From Octopus sinensis (lineage: Eukaryota), in the NCBI RefSeq assembly GCF_006345805.1, contig NW_021836423.1:1-24373 (forward strand): a stretch of DNA of 24,373 bases. The letters run 5' to 3'. The position numbers and the translations under genes were made by a program. The first letter of the stretch is position 1; each line of letters begins with the position of its first letter. Below the pieces are notes generated by a model. It did no database searches. It worked only from the letters and a program-made list of their open reading frames with translations, and was not told where the DNA came from. Positions 2,902-24,373 of this stretch are shown here, in pieces.

Positions 2902-2988
2902 CAAATAATCCACCTCACAATGCTTTCGCCAACTCGAGACTATAGAAGGTAACTCTAGCCCAAGGTACCATGCAGTGAGACTGAACCC
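2902..2988 (-). mobile_element. Decayed fragment of SINE family A (5' part)
   Basis: ctcacaatgctttcg...ctatagaag...cccaaggtaccatgcagtgagactgaaccc matches the reverse complement of the family A head seen at 12464. Confidence 0.7.
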
Positions 2989-3127
2989 AAGGCAATATAC
3001 GTACTCTTTTCACTAATACCACGATTAAAATTATGGATGCATATGAAACTTTTCTTTTCATGCGCTTTTCTTAATAAAAGAAAATTAGTTCAAATTTTTG
3101 CCAATAGAGATGCCCTAGGAAGGAGAT

Positions 3128-3246
3128 CAAGTCGATTACATCGACCCCAGTGCGTAACTGTTACTTATTTAATCGACCCCGAATGAATAAAAGGTTAAGT
3201 CGACCTCAGCGCATTTGAACTCAGAACTTGGCGACGGGCAAAATAC
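3128..3246 (-). mobile_element. SINE family B, partial older copy
   Basis: gtcgattacatcgaccccagtgcgtaactg...gtcgacctc...atttgaactcagaac is homologous to the adjacent full copy. Confidence 0.85.
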
Positions 3247-3478
3247 CTATTTTTTTACTACCCACAAGGGTAAAACACAGAGAGGACAAACAAGGACAGA
3301 CAAACAGATTAAGTCGATTACATCGACCCCCGTGCGTAACTGGTACTTAATTTATCGACCCCGAAAGGATGAAAGGCAAAGTCGACCTCGGCGGAATTTG
3401 AACTCTGAACGTAGCGGTAGACGAAATACCACAAAGCATTTCGCCCGGCGTGCTAACGTTTCTGCCAGCTCGCCGCCT
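3247..3478 (-). mobile_element. SINE family B, full length (tRNA-derived head; central block resembles the Deu/Nin SINE domain)
   Basis: Minus strand reads ggcggcgagctggcagaaacgttagcac...gagttcaaattcc (B-box-like)...gcctttcatcctttcggggtcgataaattaagtacc; near-identical to 11114-11335. The domain name is from memory. Confidence 0.9.
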
Positions 3479-3560
3479 TATTGATAAAAGAAAATAATGC
3501 AGTAAAGCAATATTATGTTTGAATTATTAGTTTATATGTCAATAAATATCAATACATTAA

Positions 3561-3776
3561 GATGACGAGCTGGCAGAATCGTTAGCACGAGGAGCGAAAT
3601 GTTTAACGATATTTCGTTTGTCTTTACGTTCTGAGTTCAAATTCCGCCAAGGTCGACTTTGCCTTTCATCCTTTCGGGGTCGACAAATTAAATACCGGTT
3701 GTGTACTGGGATCAATCTAAACAACTACCCCCCCTCCTCAAAAATTTCGGGCCTTGTGCCTAGAGTAGTAAAGAAT
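3561..3776 (+). mobile_element. SINE family B variant with a different 3' tail
   Basis: Same head and core as 3247-3478 but ends ...aaaatttcgggccttgtgcctagagtagtaaagaat. Confidence 0.85.
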
Positions 3777-3936
3777 ATATATCAATATATGTTATACATG
3801 ATGAAATAATAAAATTTATATATCGGTTCTAGTAGATTATCTCCCCATGTAGTAGCATTGTAACACTGTGGTATACACAGCATTATGAGATTGTTAAGAC
3901 AAATGGAAACTCAAAGCATTGGCATGTGTCGATTGT

Positions 3937-4380
3937 AGACGCAGGCATAGCTGTGGTTAGTAGCTTGCTTCTCAACAGCATGGTTCTCAGGCTTAGTCTC
4001 ACAGCGTGGCAACATGAGTTTCTTTTGATATAGCCTCGAGCCGAACGAAGCCTTATAAGTAGATTTGGTAAACGAAAACTGAAAGAAGCCCACTGTATAT
4101 ATATATATATATATATATATGAATGTATATTTGTATATATATATATGTATATATATATGTGTGTGTGTGTGACTGTGTTCTCCACCACCATTTGACAACC
4201 GATGTTGATGTGTTTACGTCCCTGTAACTTAGCGGTTCGGCAAAAGAACCGACAGAATGTTATTAAGCTTAAAAGAGATAAGTCATGGGGGGGGTCGATC
4301 TATCCGACTAAAAATTCTTCAAGACGTTGCCCCAGCATGGCCACAGACAAATGTTTGAAACAAGTGAAAAGGTAAAAAGA
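3937..4380 (+). mobile_element. SINE family A, diverged full-length copy with internal (TA)/(TG) tract
   Basis: Head, then gaaaactgaaagaagccc, microsatellite, ttgacaaccgatg...cttagcggttcggcaaaag, and tail tgaaacaagt. Confidence 0.85.
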
Positions 4381-6890: not shown

Positions 6891-7334
6891 ACATAGATTA
6901 ATCAGCCGAAATTGCGAGGATGATCCGGTTCTTGACTGAAGATTGAAGGCTTCGAATGTCCCGTCCGTGTTTTTTGTATCGTCTTCTAAATGTTTTGCGT
7001 TCTTGTCCCAGGTTGTATTTTTTTACATATATATATATATATTGGAAGGTTTGGAGGTGATGTACAGGTATTTTATATTAGAAGAAATGAGGGACTCAGA
7101 AATTCGGATGGTTTTATATTTACAGATATTTATTTGTATATTTCATTTTTTATACACCATATAACTTAGATCATGTAATAGCGCTTTCTCCTATTCTAGT
7201 GGGGTCTTCAAATCAAACTAAGTTCCTGTGTGAAACGTTTTTACCATTTTATAGTGGTATTGAGTTTGTAGTGGTGGGGAGGGATATATATATATGTGTG
7301 TGTGTGTCTGTATGAATAATATATATATATATAT

Positions 7335-7527
7335 ACGCGCAGGAGTGGGTGTGTGGTAAGAAGCTTGCTTCCCAACCACATGGTTCCGGGTTCAGTTCCA
7401 CTGCGTGCCAACTTGGGCAAATGTCTTTTACTATAGCCCCAGGACAACCAAAGCCTTGTGAGTGGATTTGATAGACGGAAACTGAAAGAAGCCCATCGTA
7501 TGTATGCATGTATATATATATGTGTGT

Positions 7528-7579
<52 letters not shown>

Positions 7580-7815
7580 ATGTCTGTCTGTATGTCTGTC
7601 TAGGTGTATGTGTTTGTATGTCTGTGTTTGACCCCCTCCTACCATCACTTGACAACCGATGTTGGTGTATTTACGTCGCCGTAACTTAGCGGTTCTGAAA
7701 AGAGTCTGATAAAATAAGTACTAGGCTTACAAAGAATAAGTTCTGGGGCCGATTTGTTCGGGTAGAGGCGGTGCTCCAGCATGGACAGTCATATGATTGA
7801 AACGAGTAATAGAAT
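7335..7815 (+). mobile_element. SINE family A, full length
   Basis: gcgcaggagtgggtgtgtggtaag...ggttccgggttcagttcc...central (TG)n...ctccagcatgg...tgaaacgagtaatagaat. Confidence 0.9.
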
Positions 7816-7820
7816 ATATG

Positions 7821-8035
7821 TGTGCGTGTCCCCCTAGCATTGCTTGACAACCGATGCTGGTGTGTTTATGTCCCCGTCACTTAGCGGTTCGGCAAAAGTG
7901 ACCGATAGAATAAGTACTGGACTTACAAAAGAATAAGTCCCGGGGTCGAGTTGCTCGATTAAAAGCGGTACTCCAGCATGGCCGCAGTCAAATAACTGAA
8001 ACAAGTATAAAAGAGTAAAAGAGTAAAAGAGTAAA
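7821..8035 (+). mobile_element. SINE family A, 3' half only (5'-truncated), with (AAGAGTA)n tail
   Basis: Starts after the microsatellite position and ends aagagtaaaagagtaaaagagtaaa. Confidence 0.9.
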
Positions 8036-11655: not shown

Positions 11656-12073
11656 ACTCTTTTACTCTTTTAATCTTTTACTTGTTTCAGTCATTTGACT
11701 GCGGCCATGCTGGAGCACCGCCTTTTAGTCGAGCAAATCGACCCCGGGACTTATTCTTTTGTAAGCCCAGTACTTATTCTATCGGTCTCTTTTGCCGAAC
11801 CGCTAGGTCACGGGGACGTAAACACACCAGCATCGGTTGTTAAGCAATGCTAGGGGGACAAACACAGACACACAAACACACACACACACATATATATACA
11901 TATATATATACGACGGGCTTCTTTCAGTTTCCGTCTACCAAATTCACTCACAAGGCATTGGTCAGCCCGGGGCTATAGCAGAAGACACTTGCCCAAGATG
12001 CCACGCAGTGGGACTGAACCCGGAACCATGTGGTTGGTAAGCAAGCTACTTACCACACAGCCACTCCTGCCCC
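11656..12073 (-). mobile_element. SINE family A, full length, with 18-bp target-site duplication
   Basis: TATGAGTGCATTTTATTT at 11638-11655 and 12074-12091. Confidence 0.95.
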
Positions 12074-12463
12074 TATGAGTGCATTTTATTTGGTTTGCTT
12101 CATGTTTGATTTTTTCGGGATAGAGGTGGAGCGGTCTTATTTTCTGTTGCTTTTCTCATACGTTTGTGCTCAAACATTTTTTTTTTGGTCTCGTCGTAAT
12201 ATTGTTGTTCTTGTTCCTGCTGCTACTGCTGTTGCTGCTGCTGCTCTTGGACGTTGTGTCTTATTTTGTTTTAATTCAATTTTATAGGTGAATTATTCCT
12301 TATTTGTTTATATTCCTCATAATTTTTTTTGTTTGTTTGTTTACCTAGTCAAAGATGTTCCATATTCCATTTCGCGGCAATATCCTCCCTATGTATACAT
12401 ACATGCATGAACTCGAGCGCACACACACACATATGGATACGTATTATATATATATATATATAT

Positions 12464-12878
12464 AGGCGCAGGAGTGGCTGTGTGGTAAGTAGCTTGCTTA
12501 CCAACCACATGGTTCCGGGTAGAGTCCCACTGCATGGCACCTTGGGCAAGTGTCTTCTGCTATAGCCTCGGGCCGACCAATGCCTTGTGAGTGGATTTGG
12601 TGGATGGAAACTGAAAGAAGCCCATCGTATATATGTATATATATGTATATATATGTGTGTGTATATGTTTGTGTGTCTGTGTTTGTCCCCCCACCATCGC
12701 TTGACAACCGATGTTGGTGTGCTTACGTCCCGTCACTTAGCGGTTCGGCAAAAAGAGACCGATAGAATAAGTACTGGGCTTACAAAGAATAAGTCCTGGT
12801 GTCGATTTGCTCGACTAAAGGTGGTGCTCCAGCATGGCCTCAGTCAAATGACTGAAACAAGTAAAAGAGTAAAATAGT
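12464..12878 (+). mobile_element. SINE family A, full length
   Basis: aggcgcaggagtggctgtgtggtaag ... tgactgaaacaagtaaaagagtaaaatagt; TA-rich flanks both begin gtattatatata. Confidence 0.95.
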
Positions 12879-12931
12879 GTATTATATATAATATATATAT
12901 ATATATATATTATATATATACATACATACAT

Positions 12932-13335
12932 AGATGCAAGAGCGGTTCTATGGTAAGGGAGCTTGCTTACCAACCACATGGTTCCGAGTTCAGTCCCACT
13001 GCGTTGCACCTTGGACAGGGGTCTTCTTCTATAGCCGCGGCCTCACGAAAGCCCTGTGAGTAGGCGGAAACTGAAGGAAGCCAGTCGTATATATATATAT
13101 GTGTGTGTGTGTGTGGTTGTATATGTTTGTGCGTCTGTGTTTGCCCTCCCAACATAGCTTGACAACCGATGTTGATGTCTTTACGTCTCCGTAACTTAGC
13201 GGTTCGGCAAAAGGAGACCGATAGAATAAGTACTAGGCTTACAAAGAATAAGTCCAGAGGTTGATTTGTTCGACTAAAGGTGGTGCTCCAGCATGGGCAC
13301 AACCAAATGACTGAAACAAATAAAAGAATAAAAGA
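12932..13335 (+). mobile_element. SINE family A, full length, diverged
   Basis: Colinear with 12464-12878. Confidence 0.9.
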
Positions 13336-13342
13336 TATATAT

Positions 13343-13694
13343 AGGCGCAGTCGTGGCTCTGTGGTAAAAAGCTTGCTTCCCAACTAGTAAGTTCCGGGTT
13401 CAATCCTACTGAGTGGCACCTTGAGTAAGTGTCTTCTACTATAACCTCCGCCCGACCAAACCCTTGTGAGTTGATTTGGTAGACGGAAACTGAAAGAAGC
13501 CCCTACGTAAATACATGGATATGATCGTGCGTCTGTGCTTTCCCCAACCATCGTTTGTCAATCGATGTTGGTGTGTTTACGACCCCGTAAAAGAGCAGTT
13601 CGGCAAAACAAGAAATACTAGGCTTACAAAGAATAAGTACTGGGGTTGATTTGTTCAACTAAAGGCGGTGCCCCTGCATGGCCACATTCAGAAA
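13343..13694 (+). mobile_element. SINE family A, diverged, with 3' tail eroded
   Basis: aggcgcagtcgtggctctgtggtaa...ggcggtgcccctgcatggccac. Confidence 0.85.
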
Positions 13695-15612: not shown

Positions 15613-15810
15613 CTTTTATTCTTTTAGTCTTTTACTTGTTTCAGTCATTTGAATGCGGCCATACCGGAGCACCGCCTTTAGTCGAACAAACCAATATCAG
15701 GACTTATTTTTTTGTAAGCCTAGTACTTATTTTATCGGTCTTTTATGCCGAACCGCAAATTTATGGGGTATGTAAACCAGACTAACATCGGTTGTCAAGC
15801 GATAGTGGGG
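15613..15810 (-). mobile_element. SINE family A, 3' half
   Basis: ttttacttgtttcagtcatttgaatgcggcc...catcggttgtcaagcgatagtgggg. Confidence 0.85.
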
Positions 15811-18053: not shown

Positions 18054-18564
18054 GTATGTTTGTGCTATTTTTATTCCGAGTTCATATCTTCCAGTGCTAA
18101 ATCCTGACGCAGCGATTAAAATATTTATCAAATGACATATTTTTTTTTTATCCTGTCAATACTGACAATAATATGTCTTTGAGAAGAATAAACAATTGCT
18201 AACATACTATCACATAAAAAAAAAGGGAGTACTTTTTCTGTGCTGTAGCAATTCCATATTAGCCAGATAACTCTCTCTGCAAGTTTATTTTATATTCTGA
18301 AAAAAGTCTGATGGAGATGCTGTGAGAGTTAATACTTTGTGTTTTTGTTTTTTGTAATTTTATATCATACCTTCCAGCAGGTTATTCACTGGTTTAGCAC
18401 AAAATTCTCGTTTCATGAGAGTGCAAATTGCTATCAGAAATATAAATAACCACCATGTAGTTCGGTTCCATGCAACAGTGTATTGGTTATTTTCGCAGTG
18501 GTGTGCATATTTTTTTGCCGATACACATATGTGTGTGTACCTGTATATATGTATGTATATATAT

Positions 18565-19115
18565 ATAATAGTTATCGCCATACTAATATGGCATTCTTAT
18601 AAAAATAAGAAAAAAAGCTGTCCGCTTATTCAGCTCCATGAGGCCATCGCCTTAAGTTAGCTATTTGATACACAAACTGTATCCATATAACCTTCGAACA
18701 AGGGAGGTCAGTCGCTCCACACTACTTGACCGGCAGCTACAGACGCGTTTGGGGTATTGCCCTTTTCAATGCAGCGTAGCCAGCCAGTAGGTGTCGCTCC
18801 GACAATCTCTGTTCGATGGTTTTATTTACCTAGTTTCAGTGGAATACATCCACTTGTTTTCAATAATAGAAATATTAAAATAACTAAGTCTCTCTAAAAG
18901 AGAACAGCGGCAGCGTTCCCGGAAATAATAGTTATCGCCATCTAATATGGCATTCTTATAAAATAAGAAAAAAGCTGTCCGCTCATTAGCTCCATGAGGC
19001 CATCGCCCTTAAGTAGCTATTTGATCACAAACTGTATCCATATCACCTTCGAACAAGGAGGTCAGTCGCTCCACACTACTTGACCGGCAGCTACAGACGC
19101 GTTTCGGGTATTGCC
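18565..19115 (-). mobile_element. Hammerhead-containing ~360-bp tandem repeat (retrozyme-like), left arm, ~1.5 monomers; ribozyme sense is on the minus strand
   Basis: gttatcgcca recurs at 18571 and 18931 (period 360); sequence is the reverse complement of the right arm. Confidence 0.9.
18736..18775 (-). ncRNA. Hammerhead ribozyme copy with two 1-nt deletions (lacks G12 and one stem II G)
   Basis: Minus strand: GCUGCA UUGAAAA GGG CAAUA CCCC AAA CGCGUC UGUAGC. Confidence 0.7.
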
Positions 19116-19877
19116 GCTGTTCTCTTTTAGAGAGACTTAGTTATTTTAAATATTTCTATTATTGAAACAAGTGGATGTATTCCACTGAAACTAGGTAAAT
19201 AAAAACATCGAACAGAGATTGTCGGAAGCGACCCTACTGCTGCTACGCTCTACGGGAGTAAGGCAATACCCCAAGCTTGAAAGGGCAATCCGGTCAGGCC
19301 GGTCAGAGTGTGGAGCGACGTGACCTCCCTTGTTCGAAGTTTATATGGATACAGTTTGTGTATCAAATAGCTAACTAAGGCGATGGCCTCATGGAGCTAA
19401 TAAGCGGACAGCTTTTTTCTTATTTTTATAAGAATGCCATATGTAGTATGGCGATAACTATTATTTTCCGGGAACGCTGCCGCTGTTCTCTTTTAGAGAG
19501 ACTTAGTTATTTTAATATTTCTATTATTGAAAACAAGTGGATGTATTCCACTGAAACTAGGTAAATCAAACCATCGAACAGAGATTGCCGGAAGCGACAC
19601 CTACTGCTGGCTACGCTGCATTGAAAAGGGGCAATACCCCGAAACGCGTCTGTAGCTGCCGGTCATTAGTGTGGAGCGACTGACCTCTTGTTCGAAGGTT
19701 ATATGGATACAGTTTGTGTATCAAATAGCTAACTTAAGGCGATGGCCTCATGGAGCTAATAAGCGGACAGCTTTTTTCTTATTTTTATAGGAATGCCATA
19801 TTAGTATGGCGATACTATTATTTTCCGGAAACGCTGCCGCTGTTCTCTTTTAGAGATATTAGTTATTTTAATATTTC

Positions 19878-19882
<5 letters not shown>
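19112..19882 (+). mobile_element. Same ~360-bp repeat, right arm, ~2.1 monomers; ribozyme sense is on the plus strand
   Basis: gccgctgttctc recurs at 19113, 19479 and 19836; the array ends in (TA)n. Confidence 0.9.
19615..19656 (+). ncRNA. Intact type I hammerhead ribozyme, U3:A8 core variant; predicted cleavage after C19650
   Basis: Stem I GCUGCA/UGUAGC (6 bp, one G-U); core UUGAAAA; stem II GGGG-CAAUA-CCCC; GAAA; palindromic stem III ACGCGU; GUC triplet. Confidence 0.85.

Positions 19883-19930
<48 letters not shown>
19881..19930. repeat. (TA)n
   Basis: Direct reading. Confidence 0.95.
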
Positions 19931-19935
<5 letters not shown>

Positions 19936-19937
<2 letters not shown>

Positions 19938-20136
19938 TTCGAGACAAAACCACTATTTTGCAAATCAAACAGGAAAGACTTAAATCAATACATAACAAAT
20001 TTTAATATAAGTAAATTTATTTTTATTTATTTATTTTATTTTATTTATTTATTTATTATTTACTTTATATTAAAAATTTTTTATGTATTGATAAGTCTTT
20101 CCTTGTTGATTTGCAATAGTGGTTTTGTCTCGAATT
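19936..20136. repeat. Fold-back inverted repeat: ~80-bp arms around a (TTTA)n spacer
   Basis: aattcgagacaaaaccactatt...gtaaat (19936-20016) versus atttac...aatagtggttttgtctcgaatt (20058-20136). Confidence 0.9.
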
Positions 20137-20219
20137 ATATTATATAATATTTTACTATTAATTGGATTAATCCTAAATCTGATTTTTTCCCTGTAATTTT
20201 GGATTTATTCCCTAATATT

Positions 20220-20263
<44 letters not shown>

Positions 20264-21705: not shown

Positions 21706-21744
<39 letters not shown>

Positions 21745-21746
<2 letters not shown>

Positions 21747-22153
21747 TCTTTTACTCTCTTACTCTTTTACTTGTTTCAGTCATTTGACTGCGGCCATGGA
21801 GCACCACCTTTAATCGAGCAACTCGACCCCGGGACTTACTCTTTTGTAAGCCCAGTACTTATTCTATCAGTCTATTTTGCCGAACCGCTAAGTAACGGGG
21901 ACATAAACACACCAGCATCGGTTGTCAAGCAATGCTAGGGAGACAAACACAGACACACAAACACACCACACGCATATATATATACATATATACGACGGCT
22001 TCTTTCAGTTTCCGTCTACCAAATGCACTCACAAGGCTTTGGTCAGCCCGAGGATATAGTAGAAGACACATGCCCAAGGTGCCACGCAGTGGGACTGAAC
22101 CCGGAACCATGTTGGTTTGTTCAGCAAGCTACTTACCACACAGCCACTCCTGC
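21745..22153 (-). mobile_element. SINE family A, full length, between two (TA)n tracts
   Basis: Colinear with 11656-12073. Confidence 0.95.
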
Positions 22154-22156
22154 TAT

Positions 22157-22237
<81 letters not shown>

Positions 22238-23513: not shown

Positions 23514-23783
23514 TCTTTTACTCTCTTTTACTCTTTTGTTTCAGTTATTTGACTGCGGCCATGCTAGAGCATCGCCTTTAGTCGAACAAATCGACAACAT
23601 CGCTAATTCTTTGTAAGCGTAGTATTTATTCTATCGATTTCTTTTGCCGAACCAATAAGTTATGGTGACATAAACACACCAGCATCGGTTGTCAAGCGAT
23701 GGTGGGGTGTACGAAAACAGACACGCAAACATGTCACATATATATACATGTGTATATATATATATATATATACATACACATAC

Positions 23784-23856
<73 letters not shown>

Positions 23857-24002
23857 CGACGAGTTTCTTTCAGTTTCCGTCTACCAAATTCACTCACAAG
23901 GCTTTGGTTGGCTCGAGGCTATAGTAGAAGACACTTACCCGGCAGAACCCGGAACCATGTGGTTGGTAAACAAGCTACTTGCCACACAGCCGCTTTGCGC
24001 CT
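23514..24002 (-). mobile_element. SINE family A, near full length, expanded central microsatellite
   Basis: Colinear with other copies, with a small deletion in the head. Confidence 0.9.
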
Positions 24003-24045
24003 ATAATATATATATATATATATATACACACATACACACCCGGGG

Positions 24046-24146
24046 GACGGTTTCTTTCAATTTCTATCTATTAAATCCACTTACACGGCTCCGGTCGGCC
24101 TGTGGTTGCCAAGCAAGGTACTTGCCACACAGCCACTCCTGCGCCT
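24046..24146 (-). mobile_element. SINE family A, 5' half with internal deletion
   Basis: gacggtttctttcaatttc...ccacacagccactcctgcgcct. Confidence 0.75.
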
Positions 24147-24373
24147 GTAGCAAGCTACACATACTGTTTATTTAAATTAATCTCAATATATTAATATTTT
24201 AATAGTTTTCTAAACTCGTTTGGAGTAATGTTTTGGTCGGATGTGTTCACTTTAATTATCAGCATTCAGTCCTTGTCCTTACATACGATATCTGAAAGGT
24301 TAGCCTTGATTTTCTCCACCAGTTTGTATAGGTATGTATCACATGATAGCAACTAAGTTTTTTCTCATGCAGT

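What the first reader, a model, noticed from the sequence alone, without database searches (positions are those of the whole stretch)
18565..19882. Retrozyme-like array: ~360-bp non-coding monomers, each built around a hammerhead ribozyme
Seen: a tandem unit with periods of 360, 366 and 357 bp, no meaningful ORF, one hammerhead position per unit, and several internal hairpins (GCCATA/TATGGC, TCTTAT/ATAAGA, AGTGGA/TCCACT). Known: metazoan non-LTR retrozymes are tandem repeats of a few hundred bp with type I hammerheads, whose multimeric transcripts self-cleave to monomers that circularise; they are thought to be mobilised by Penelope-like elements. Inference: this is such a family in a probable cephalopod, predicted to yield a ~360-nt linear or circular RNA starting UGUAGCUGCCGG. 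Both array ends merge into (TA)n.
Basis: partly seen in the sequence, partly recalled or inferred. Interest (0 to 1): 0.92.

Follow-up and report, generated by a model that had tools for sequence, protein, structure and literature searches.

The report
Decayed hammerhead retrozyme insertion, two opposed arrays
This is an old, broken insertion of a small non-coding mobile repeat (about 357 bp) that carries a self-cleaving hammerhead ribozyme: a known kind of animal element, notable here mainly because its two back-to-back arrays look like the footprint of reverse transcription primed from both DNA strands.

Summary
It is not one head-to-tail array. It is 1.56 units on the minus strand (18565-19122) joined head-to-head to 2.16 units on the plus strand (19112-19883).

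Rfam finds no hammerhead at any threshold. A covariance model built only from four experimentally validated animal retrozyme hammerheads (coral, mussel, two axolotl) picks 19615-19656(+) as the top window hit: 32-37 bits, E about 1e-7 to 1e-8, noise at or below 9 bits. The homologous site of copy A1 comes second.

The motif has the canonical metazoan type I geometry: helix I 6 bp, helix II 4 bp, helix III 1 bp plus a palindromic CGCG loop. Its core carries U3-A8 instead of C3-G8, a covariation already reported in Penelope-like elements. Only one of four copies is intact, so this locus cannot release a monomer.

The circularised monomer folds strongly and strand-specifically (z -6.7 sense, -4.1 antisense) with the hammerhead free. 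Both outer ends stop at CTATTAT next to (TA)n. The inverted arm's start lies 13 nt from the direct arm's 5' end on the template, a twin-priming or Penelope-type signature.

Verdict: new member of a known kind, moderate interest. Genome-wide copies and the organism could not be checked.

The parts
18565..18912 (-). Copy A1: unit positions 1-344, 96% identical to copy C. Outer (3') end of the inverted array.
   Evidence: BLASTN; alignment
18913..19122 (-). Copy A2: 5'-truncated unit (unit positions 146-357), 92% identical to C. Its 5' end lies inside hammerhead loop 2.
   Evidence: BLASTN
19112..19122 (.). Head-to-head junction of the two arrays. TGCC/GGCA (4 nt) is shared exactly, and 9 of 11 nt fit both arms (microhomology).
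19112..19477 (+). Copy B: full unit (366 bp), 88% identical to C, with the hammerhead segment rearranged.
19250..19306 (+). Rearranged segment of copy B. It has no cleavage site, a partial second copy of the 5' half of the ribozyme, and a duplicated CCGGTCA.
   Evidence: no model hit
19478..19834 (+). Copy C: reference unit, 357 bp, 41.5% GC.
19835..19883 (+). Copy D: first 49 nt of a further unit. Outer (3') end of the direct array.
19615..19656 (+). Intact type I hammerhead: GCUGCA UUGAAAA GGGG-CAAUA-CCCC GAAA C GCG U C|UGUAGC. Core has U3-A8. Predicted cleavage is between 19650 and 19651.
   Evidence: descriptor; models R1 32.0 bits and R2 36.7 bits; folds
18736..18775 (-). Hammerhead remnant of copy A1. 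Same U3-A8 core, but position 12 is C instead of G and helix II is reduced to 3 bp, so it is presumably inactive.
   Evidence: R1 18 bits, R2 22.6 bits
19090..19117 (-). 3' half of the hammerhead of copy A2 (loop 2 to helix I 3' strand), cut off by the junction.
   Evidence: R2 8.3 bits; sequence
18565..18571 (-). CTATTAT (sense) at the outer end of the inverted array, abutting TA/TG microsatellite. Proposed cDNA start site.
19877..19883 (+). CTATTAT at the outer end of the direct array, abutting (TA)27. Proposed cDNA start site.
18521..18564 (.). Left target flank: impure TG/TA microsatellite.
19884..19934 (.). Right target flank: (TA)27.
   Evidence: TRF

Best explanation
The region is an old, decayed insertion of a small non-autonomous retroelement of the animal 'non-LTR retrozyme' / Penelope-associated kind.

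How the family works (inferred from published relatives):
1. Arrays of the ~357-nt unit are transcribed as multimers.
2. Type I hammerheads of neighbouring units pair through their palindromic helix III (ACGCGU) and cut after GUC. This releases monomers that begin UGUAGCUGCCGG.
3. A host RNA ligase circularises the monomers into a highly base-paired circle that leaves the ribozyme free.
4. The reverse transcriptase/endonuclease of an autonomous element, most likely a Penelope-like element, copies multimeric or circular RNA into tandem cDNA at AT-rich targets.

How this locus arose (inferred from its geometry):
- Both strands of a (TA)n target were nicked, and both 3' ends primed cDNA synthesis at the two CUAUUAU sites of the repeating template.
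- One cDNA ran 2.16 units and the other 1.56 units.
- Their ends were joined head-to-head at a 4-nt microhomology.
- This gave <-A1 <-A2 | B-> C-> D->.

Present state (shown): one of four ribozyme positions is intact. No monomer can be excised here, and a read-through transcript would form a ~560-bp hairpin.
For: Ribozyme:
- Models built only from four validated retrozyme hammerheads (sequences from the PMC7229834 supplement; alignment) rank 19615-19656(+) first. R1 gives 32.0 bits, E 2.3e-7. R2, with the 3-8 pair modelled, gives 36.7 bits, E 2e-8.
- The A1 site ranks second at 18 and 22.6 bits. Noise is at most 9 bits.
- The descriptor finds a unique hit that is rare in shuffles.
- The geometry of 6 bp / 4 bp / 1 bp plus a palindromic tetraloop equals the 'canonical metazoan type I' architecture (PMC4209133). 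It also matches axolotl Ax330 (GAAA-CAUG-UC) and mussel (GAAAC-GCGC-GUC).
- U3-A8 is a documented natural covariation of C3-G8 in PLE hammerheads. Both informative copies here (C and A1) carry it, while all other core positions of C are intact.

Unit:
- 357 bp, matching mussel retrozymes at 350-390 bp.
- GC 41.5%, below the 45% reported for retrozymes.
- No ORF longer than 61 aa and no Pfam domains nearby.
- Circular fold -115.7 kcal/mol, z -6.7, with helices I and II present in the MFE at no energy cost.
- The sense strand folds about 22 kcal/mol better than the antisense (z -6.7 against -4.1). The left-array monomer reproduces this (z -5.5 against -4.2).

Insertion mechanism:
- The 3' ends of both arms face outward, and both stop at the only two CTATTAT sites of the unit, next to TA repeats.
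- The inverted arm's start (unit position 344) lies 13 nt upstream of the direct arm's 5' end (position 1). P is about 0.08 for that adjacency and about 3e-4 for both ends falling at those sites.
- The arms are not mirror images at the junction (offset 145 nt), which excludes a simple fold-back duplication.
- PLE insertions are described as partial tandems plus an adjacent inverted 5'-truncated copy, with a microsatellite bias that includes (TA)n (PMC8557442).
- A purified PLE protein cleaves and extends both strands, prefers AT-rich DNA, and starts reverse transcription at the same internal RNA sites on both strands (PMC11167929).
Against: - No Rfam hammerhead model matches at any threshold.
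- Positions 3 and 8 depart from the canonical core, and activity of this variant was not tested. PLE-type minimal hammerheads cleave poorly in vitro.
- Only one of four copies is intact, and the ribozyme segment is the least conserved part of the unit in every pairwise comparison.
- Covariation among the local copies is not significant (51 of 500 shuffles).
- No other copy of the family could be found. The window has none, and the public collections I could reach do not cover this genome. Family-level conservation, copy number and expression are therefore unknown.
- No Penelope-like ORF lies in the 24-kb window.
- Target-site duplications cannot be read in a microsatellite.
- The twin-priming reading rests on one locus. 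The inverted junction could also be an assembly error, since PLE-type structures are known to confuse assemblies.
- Copy B differs from the others more than a single circular template would predict.
Confidence: 0.68

Rival explanations
1. The repeats are pseudo-LTR (pLTR) fragments of an autonomous Penelope-like element, not an independent non-autonomous retrozyme family. On this reading it is a solo-pLTR tandem/inverted remnant whose ORF was never copied, through extreme 5' truncation, or was lost.
For: - PLE pLTRs carry hammerheads, and PLE insertions are heavily 5'-truncated and form tandem/inverted structures in microsatellites.
- The U3-A8 core was first described in PLE hammerheads.
- The 2026 preprint finds pLTRs and retrozymes phylogenetically intermingled.
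Against: - The ribozyme has the canonical retrozyme geometry (helix I 6 bp, helix II 4 bp) rather than the minimal PLE form.
- Whole units repeat seamlessly at 354-366 bp and close into a circle-like rod with the ribozyme free.
- There is no RT/GIY-YIG coding remnant next to the arrays or in ORFs of at least 90 aa across the window.
Confidence: 0.17
2. This is an ordinary satellite or tandem repeat whose hammerhead-like motif is fortuitous. A replication error (template switch) after amplification inverted part of it.
For: - Rfam is negative.
- The motif is intact in only one copy and is the least conserved segment.
- The relaxed descriptor still hits 0.05 times per shuffled window.
- The junction shows microhomology, which replication-based rearrangements also produce.
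Against: - The independent model scores 32-37 bits against noise of at most 9 bits.
- Thirteen of 15 core positions are canonical, and the other two change together so that the pair is kept.
- Helix lengths and the palindromic loop 3 match validated ribozymes.
- The fold is strand-specific with the ribozyme free.
- The arms are not mirror images at the junction, and both outer ends sit at the same heptamer.
Confidence: 0.07
3. This is a foldback or MITE-type DNA transposon whose long inverted arms are built of tandem subrepeats and which inserted at a TA site.
For: - The two arms of ~560 bp pair into a -958 kcal/mol hairpin.
- The terminal 7 nt are inverted repeats (ATAATAG...CTATTAT) flanked by TA.
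- A palindromic MITE-like element lies next door.
Against: - Beyond those 7 nt the two termini correspond to different unit positions (344 and 49), so there are no true terminal inverted repeats.
- The arms have unequal length and are out of register at the centre.
- The presence of a hammerhead and a strand-specific RNA fold points to an RNA-based element.
Confidence: 0.04
4. The head-to-head junction is an assembly artefact that joins two separate arrays, or collapses a longer one. Only the tandem arrays themselves would then be real.
For: PLE-type tandem/inverted structures are reported to cause assembly problems, especially with short reads. The junction lies in an 11-nt stretch that fits both arms.
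Against: - The 13-nt adjacency of the two breakpoints on the template, and the matching outer ends, are not expected from a random misjoin.
- Both flanks are TA microsatellite, consistent with one insertion site.
Confidence: 0.04

Closest known systems
Animal non-LTR retrozymes (Cervera & de la Pena, NAR 2020, PMC7229834), especially the mussel Mytilus galloprovincialis Mg353 family and the axolotl Ax330 family
   Same: - Non-coding tandem unit of the same size class (357 bp here, 350-390 bp in mussel, 330-350 bp in axolotl), with low GC.
- Type I hammerhead with helix I 6 bp, helix II 4 bp, a 5-nt loop 2, and a very short helix III capped by a palindromic loop. Here it is GAAA-CGCG-UC, in Ax330 GAAA-CAUG-UC, in mussel GAAAC-GCGC-GUC.
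- Cleavage after GUC followed by U.
- Circular monomer predicted to be highly paired with the ribozyme free.
   Different: - No sequence similarity to the mussel unit outside the ribozyme.
- Core U3-A8 instead of C3-G8.
- Only 1.6 and 2.2 units, in opposite orientations.
- Three of four ribozymes are defective.
- Expression, circularity and copy number are unknown.
Hammerheads and insertion structures of Penelope-like elements (PMC4209133, PMC8557442, PMC11167929)
   Same: - U3-A8 covariation of the core.
- Palindromic helix III, implying action as a dimer.
- Partial tandem plus an adjacent inverted 5'-truncated copy.
- AT-rich or (TA)n target.
- Both target strands used as primers, with the same internal RT start sequence.
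   Different: - No RT/GIY-YIG ORF here.
- The ribozyme has the canonical rather than the minimal form.
- No recognisable 30-40-bp 'tail'.
- The repeated unit is the whole element, not a flank of an ORF.
LINE-1 twin priming (5'-inverted insertions)
   Same: - The inverted and direct segments have outward-facing 3' ends.
- The priming site of the inverted segment lies next to the 5' end of the direct segment on the template (13-nt gap).
- There is microhomology at the internal junction.
   Different: - The template is a repeating or circular non-coding RNA without poly(A).
- Both primers anneal at UAUUAU next to a TA microsatellite.
- The enzyme is probably not an L1-type protein.
- Target-site duplication cannot be seen.
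Newt/salamander satellite 2 hammerhead repeats
   Same: A ~330-bp tandem repeat with a type I hammerhead that has a 1-bp helix III and a palindromic tetraloop, and is active mainly as a dimer (PMC7229834).
   Different: A different phylum and sequence, huge copy number and demonstrated transcripts in amphibians. None of this is known here.

Membership tests
Animal non-LTR retrozyme | Head-to-tail tandem repeats of a 150-450 bp monomer | tested here: met
   Periods are 354-359 bp (left arm) and 366/357 bp (right arm). Each arm holds only 1.56 or 2.16 units, and the two arms are inverted relative to each other.
Animal non-LTR retrozyme | A type I hammerhead with the conserved catalytic core in each monomer | tested here: inconclusive
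   Copy C is a complete motif with U3-A8 in place of C3-G8 (32-37 bits). A1 lacks G12, A2 is truncated and B is rearranged.
Animal non-LTR retrozyme | Low GC (<45%), non-coding, no LTR/PBS/PPT | tested here: met
   GC is 41.5%. The longest stop-free stretch is 61 aa. There are no terminal direct repeats other than the unit itself.
Animal non-LTR retrozyme | Monomer predicted to form a stable circle in which the hammerhead can adopt its active fold | tested here: met
   Circular MFE is -115.7 kcal/mol, z -6.7. Helices I and II are in the MFE with ddG 0. The fold is strand-specific.
Animal non-LTR retrozyme | Expressed as monomeric linear and circular RNA; self-cleavage | not testable with these tools
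   No transcriptome or bench assay is available. At this locus only one cleavage site exists, so the RNA would have to come from other arrays.
Animal non-LTR retrozyme | Multicopy family dispersed in the genome | not testable with these tools
   There is no other copy in the window. The collections I could reach do not contain this genome.
Hammerhead ribozyme, type I | Conserved core CUGANGA / GAAA / UH with three helices, helix I open | tested here: inconclusive
   Copy C reads UUGAAAA / GAAA / UC. Thirteen of 15 positions are canonical. Positions 3 and 8 change together to U-A, keeping the pair. This natural variant is reported in PMC4209133. Activity is untested.
Hammerhead ribozyme, type I | Match to the curated Rfam models (Hammerhead_1 and relatives) at gathering score | tested here: not met
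   There is no hammerhead hit at gathering score, nor at E<=10 on 1.6 kb or on 96 nt.
Hammerhead ribozyme, type I | Loop 1 - loop 2 tertiary contacts | not tested
   An internal loop (UAC/U) follows helix I, and loop 2 is CAAUA. The consensus contact nucleotides were only in figures that I could not read. Mussel retrozyme hammerheads also lack most of them.
Penelope-like element (autonomous) | ORF encoding reverse transcriptase plus GIY-YIG endonuclease between pLTRs | tested here: not met
   There are no ORFs of at least 90 aa other than low-complexity ones. The ten stop-free stretches flanking the locus have no RT or EN domains. The rest of the window was not exhaustively scanned for decayed fragments.
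Penelope-type insertion signature | Partial tandem with an adjacent inverted 5'-truncated copy, in an AT-rich or microsatellite target | tested here: met
   The architecture is <-A1 <-A2(5'-truncated) | B-> C-> D->, inside TA/TG microsatellite.
Penelope-type insertion signature | 30-40-bp 'tail' extension at one end | tested here: inconclusive
   The 49-nt partial unit D could be read as such, but it is simply the continuation of the repeat.
Twin-primed retrotransposition | Priming site of the inverted segment adjacent on the template to the 5' end of the direct segment; microhomology at the junction | tested here: met
   Unit position 344 against position 1 of the next unit gives a 13-nt gap (P about 0.08). 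TGCC microhomology is present.
Twin-primed retrotransposition | Target-site duplication flanking the whole insertion | not testable with these tools
   Both flanks are TA-type microsatellite, and no empty site is available.

The most novel reading that the evidence does not exclude
The locus may be a fossil of dual-strand target-primed reverse transcription of a multimeric or circular retrozyme RNA. Two cDNAs would have started at the same short RNA motif (CUAUUAU) from the two nicked strands of a (TA)n target. That would be direct structural evidence that animal retrozymes are integrated by Penelope-type machinery. The family would use a U3-A8 hammerhead core in an otherwise canonical type I ribozyme, in a lineage (possibly cephalopods) where retrozymes have not been described. 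A side consequence is that such head-to-head insertions encode ~560-bp hairpin RNAs, which could feed RNA interference or RNA editing against the family.
Probability: 0.35. Interest if true: 0.6.

Novelty: new member of a known kind. Interest (0 to 1): 0.42.

Why it matters
Retrozymes and Penelope-like elements are linked in the literature mainly by co-occurrence and by the similarity of pLTRs to retrozymes. How retrozyme RNA is put back into DNA has not been shown.

A retrozyme insertion shaped as tandem plus inverted, in a TA repeat, with both cDNA starts at the same motif, reproduces what a purified Penelope-like enzyme does in vitro. It gives a concrete signature to search for genome-wide.

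The locus also shows that a validated-sequence covariance model recovers a hammerhead that Rfam misses completely. Annotation based on Rfam therefore probably undercounts U3-A8 variants with a short helix III.

In itself the locus is a dead copy with no expected function.

Tried and rejected
- **Rfam:** searched at gathering score and at E<=10 on 24 kb, 1.6 kb and 96 nt. No hammerhead was reported. The weak miRNA and snoRNA hits are microsatellite artefacts.
- **TRF:** no ~360-bp period, because of the inversion and the low copy number.
- **More copies by DNA pattern:** a 20-mer invariant in all four copies gave 7 metagenome loci. All are bare 20-mers with no extension, so they are chance matches. 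Viral contigs gave 0.
- **More copies by protein search:** I used spurious ORFs as handles in the 5.8-billion-protein collection. The 57-aa unit ORF and a SINE-derived ORF both found no candidate. The genome is evidently not covered, so I did not spend the third search.
- **Pfam on whole frames:** Replaced by ten stop-free stretches around the locus, which gave nothing but one sub-threshold chance hit.
- **Covariation among local copies:** too little variation, not significant.
- **Homology to the mussel retrozyme outside the ribozyme:** none.
- **Simple fold-back duplication:** rejected because the arms are 145 nt out of register at the junction.
- **Foldback/MITE reading:** rejected for lack of true terminal inverted repeats.
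- **tRNA-derived head for the SINE-like repeat:** none found.
- **Biochemistry of the U3-A8 variant:** literature searches found only the natural-variant report. Two queries failed on term length.
Full report
**1. What is in the sequence**

Between 18565 and 19883 a non-coding unit of about 357 bp is repeated. BLASTN of one unit (19478-19834) against the whole window returns five pieces and nothing elsewhere:

| Piece | Coordinates | Strand | Unit positions | Identity to C |
|---|---|---|---|---|
| A1 | 18565-18912 | minus | 1-344 | 96% |
| A2 | 18913-19122 | minus | 146-357 only | 92% |
| B | 19112-19477 | plus | full unit | 88% |
| C | 19478-19834 | plus | reference unit | - |
| D | 19835-19883 | plus | first 49 nt | - |

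They are 366 and 357 bp on the right and 354-359 bp on the left.
- The object is not one head-to-tail array. Two short arrays face each other and meet head-to-head at 19112-19122.
- This explains why Tandem Repeats Finder reports no ~360-bp period and why the repeat finder lists long inverted repeats between the two halves.
- The right end abuts (TA)27. The left end abuts only a short, impure TA/TG run.
- Nothing in the array encodes more than 61 residues without a stop.

**2. Is there a hammerhead?**

Rfam says no. There is no hit at gathering score on the window, none at E<=10 on 1.6 kb, and none at E<=10 on a 96-nt slice centred on the best candidate.

Read by hand, copy C contains GCUGCA-UUGAAAA-GGGG-CAAUA-CCCC-GAAA-C-GCG-U-C|UGUAGC.
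- Every core position is canonical except position 3 (U instead of C) and position 8 (A instead of G).
- In the active fold C3 and G8 form a Watson-Crick pair, so U3-A8 is a compensated change.

My own descriptor gave these counts:
- 0 hits on both strands of the window with a canonical core.
- Exactly 1 hit (19615-19656, plus strand) when any Watson-Crick 3-8 pair is allowed.

Dinucleotide-preserving shuffles give 0.0475 hits per window, 0.0025 with a helix I as long as observed, and 0.0003 per shuffle of the repeat region.

The literature then supplied a yardstick.
- PMC4209133 describes canonical metazoan type I hammerheads as having helix I of 6 bp, helix II of 4 bp and helix III of 1-2 bp capped by a small palindromic loop. 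They act as dimers in tandem repeats. The same paper reports U3-A8 as a natural covariation of C3-G8 in Penelope-like elements, with about 1,300 hits in Schistosoma.
- Copy C has that geometry: 6 bp, 4 bp, and an A-U pair closing the palindromic CGCG.
- The supplement of PMC7229834 gives four experimentally cleaving retrozyme constructs with marked cleavage sites: coral Amil224, mussel Mg353, and axolotl Ax353 and Ax330.

I aligned only those four ribozymes. I built two covariance models from them, R1 with the three helices and R2 with C3-G8 also treated as a pair. I then searched the whole window with filters off.

| Site | R1 bits (E) | R2 bits (E) |
|---|---|---|
| 19615-19656 (+), copy C | 32.0 (2.3e-7) | 36.7 (2e-8) |
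| 18736-18775 (-), copy A1 | 18 (0.003) | 22.6 (0.00018) |
| 19090-19117 (-), copy A2 remnant | not listed | 8.3 |
| Best unrelated hit | 8.3 | 9.0 |

The candidate was not in the training set, so this is an independent test. I conclude that the hammerhead call is right in kind, and that Rfam's models miss this variant.

**3. State of the four ribozyme positions**

- Only copy C is complete.
- A1 carries the same U3-A8 core, but has C at position 12 where the essential G should be, and has lost one helix II pair.
- A2 is cut inside loop 2 by the head-to-head junction.
- B is rearranged between 19250 and 19306. The cleavage site is gone, an imperfect second copy of the 5' half of the ribozyme follows GGCAATACCCC, and CCGGTCA is duplicated. 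Neither model finds anything there.
- In every pairwise comparison the ribozyme segment is less conserved than the rest of the unit. For example, C against A1 is 92.9% in the ribozyme and 96.1% elsewhere, and C against B is 52% and 91%.
However, these are neighbouring dead copies, so the comparison says little about selection on the family.

A ribozyme with a 1-bp helix III is expected to need a second copy on the same transcript to form the extended ACGCGU/ACGCGU helix. Axolotl Ax330 cleaves only 6% in an hour as a monomer (PMC7229834). No such partner exists here on either strand.

The specific prediction of a ~360-nt RNA released from this locus therefore fails. A read-through transcript of the whole locus would fold into a ~560-bp hairpin of -958 kcal/mol.

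**4. The unit as an RNA**

I circularised the copy C monomer, starting at the predicted cleavage site.
- It folds to -115.7 kcal/mol against -81 to -82 for dinucleotide shuffles, z = -6.7.
- The minimum-energy structure already contains hammerhead helices I and II, so adopting the competent fold costs nothing. The rest of the unit forms a long quasi-rod that closes helix I.
- The complement folds about 22 kcal/mol worse, with z = -4.1.
- The independent monomer of the left array reproduces the asymmetry, with z = -5.5 against -4.2.
- GC is 41.5% against 35% for the window.

These are the properties published for metazoan retrozyme circles: low GC, high self-pairing and a free ribozyme (PMC7229834). 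The size matches the 350-390 bp of mussel retrozymes.

Outside the ribozyme there is no similarity to the mussel unit, so this is a separate family.

Covariation among the local copies is too sparse to be significant, with 51 of 500 shuffles reaching the observed values. It includes one compensated C-G to A-U pair in copy B.

**5. How the locus was made**

I expressed both arms in the sense of the ribozyme strand.
- Both arms have their 3' ends outward and their 5' ends at the centre.
- Both outer ends stop at the heptamer CTATTAT followed by TA repeats. These are the only two CTATTAT sites in the unit, at positions 44 and 338.
- The inverted arm begins at unit position 344. The direct arm's 5' end is position 1 of the next unit, 13 nt downstream on a repeating template. 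The chance of that adjacency is about 0.08. The chance that both ends fall at those two sites is about 3e-4.
- The junction shares TGCC exactly, and 9 of 11 nt fit both arms.
- The arms are 145 nt out of register at the junction, so a simple fold-back duplication is excluded.

This is the geometry of twin priming. Two cDNAs are primed from the two nicked strands of one target, and the priming site of the inverted piece lies next to the 5' end of the direct piece.

It also matches what is described for Penelope-like elements:
- Partial tandems with an adjacent inverted 5'-truncated copy, and an insertion bias for microsatellites including (TA)n (PMC8557442).
- A purified enzyme that cleaves and extends both strands, prefers AT-rich DNA and starts reverse transcription at the same internal RNA sites on both strands (PMC11167929).

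The retrozyme literature proposes that circular or multimeric RNA is copied into tandem cDNA by such an enzyme. A 2026 preprint argues that retrozymes derive from PLE pLTRs.

This step is inferred, and it rests on a single locus. Target duplications cannot be read in a microsatellite. The junction could be a misassembly. Copy B is more divergent than a single circular template would predict.

**6. What could not be done**

- I could not obtain any other copy of the family or identify the organism. Exact-pattern scans of metagenome and viral collections gave only chance 20-mers or nothing. Protein-collection searches with repeat-derived ORFs found nothing.
- No Penelope-like coding remnant is visible in ORFs of at least 90 aa or in the stop-free stretches flanking the locus. 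Decayed fragments elsewhere in the window were not exhaustively excluded.
- 'Probable cephalopod' remains unverified.
- The library holds no paper describing retrozymes in cephalopods. One squid genome paper lists 235 Rfam hammerhead hits, and Octopus vulgaris has about 30 Penelope families.

**7. Verdict**

- It is a retrozyme-type, hammerhead-bearing repeat. It is a new family of a known kind, with a known but uncommon core variant.
- It is present here as a decayed, non-functional insertion made of two opposed arrays.
- The most interesting aspect is the insertion footprint, which fits Penelope-type dual-strand priming and is testable genome-wide.

Noticed in passing
window 19935-20137 (with 19881-19934 and 20215-20261): A ~203-bp palindromic, MITE-like element (arms ~75 nt, ~90% complementary, possible TA duplication) lies directly after the (TA)27 that ends the array. 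An (AT)24 run follows it. The same TA microsatellite appears to have received two unrelated insertions.
   Followed up: partly
window 2907-4377, 7319-8024, 11664-12076, 12445-13690, 15622-15810, 21718-22174, 23519-24149: An interspersed SINE-like repeat of ~440-460 bp occurs in at least ten copies in both orientations (72-91% identity). It includes a tandem pair at 12445-13333. ARAGORN finds no tRNA-like head, and no protein-collection hit was found with its conceptual translation.
   Followed up: partly
window 19250-19306 (copy B): The hammerhead segment is replaced by a rearranged sequence with a partial second copy of the ribozyme's 5' half and a duplicated CCGGTCA. Copy B also holds the only compensated base-pair change (C-G to A-U). 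This hints that it derives from a different RNA variant than copies C and A1.
   Followed up: partly
window 19615-19656 and 18736-18775: Rfam 15 reports no hammerhead at any threshold, yet a 4-sequence model of validated retrozyme ribozymes scores these sites at 32-37 and 18-23 bits. Rfam-based annotation probably undercounts U3-A8 hammerheads with a 1-bp helix III.
   Followed up: yes
window 18565-19883: The whole locus folds into a ~560-bp near-perfect hairpin (-958 kcal/mol). If transcribed through, it would give long double-stranded RNA, a potential substrate for RNA interference or A-to-I editing.
   Followed up: no
window 18514-18588: Weak Rfam matches to mir-297, mir-1277 and mir-3149 (19-30 bits, far below gathering score) fall on the TG/TA microsatellite left of the array. 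They are low-complexity artefacts.
   Followed up: yes
whole window: The window is extremely rich in microsatellites (67 TRF rows, including TATG, TAGA, TAA, ACT and TA runs of 200-500 bp). GC is 35%, and there is no convincing protein-coding ORF in 24 kb.
   Followed up: no
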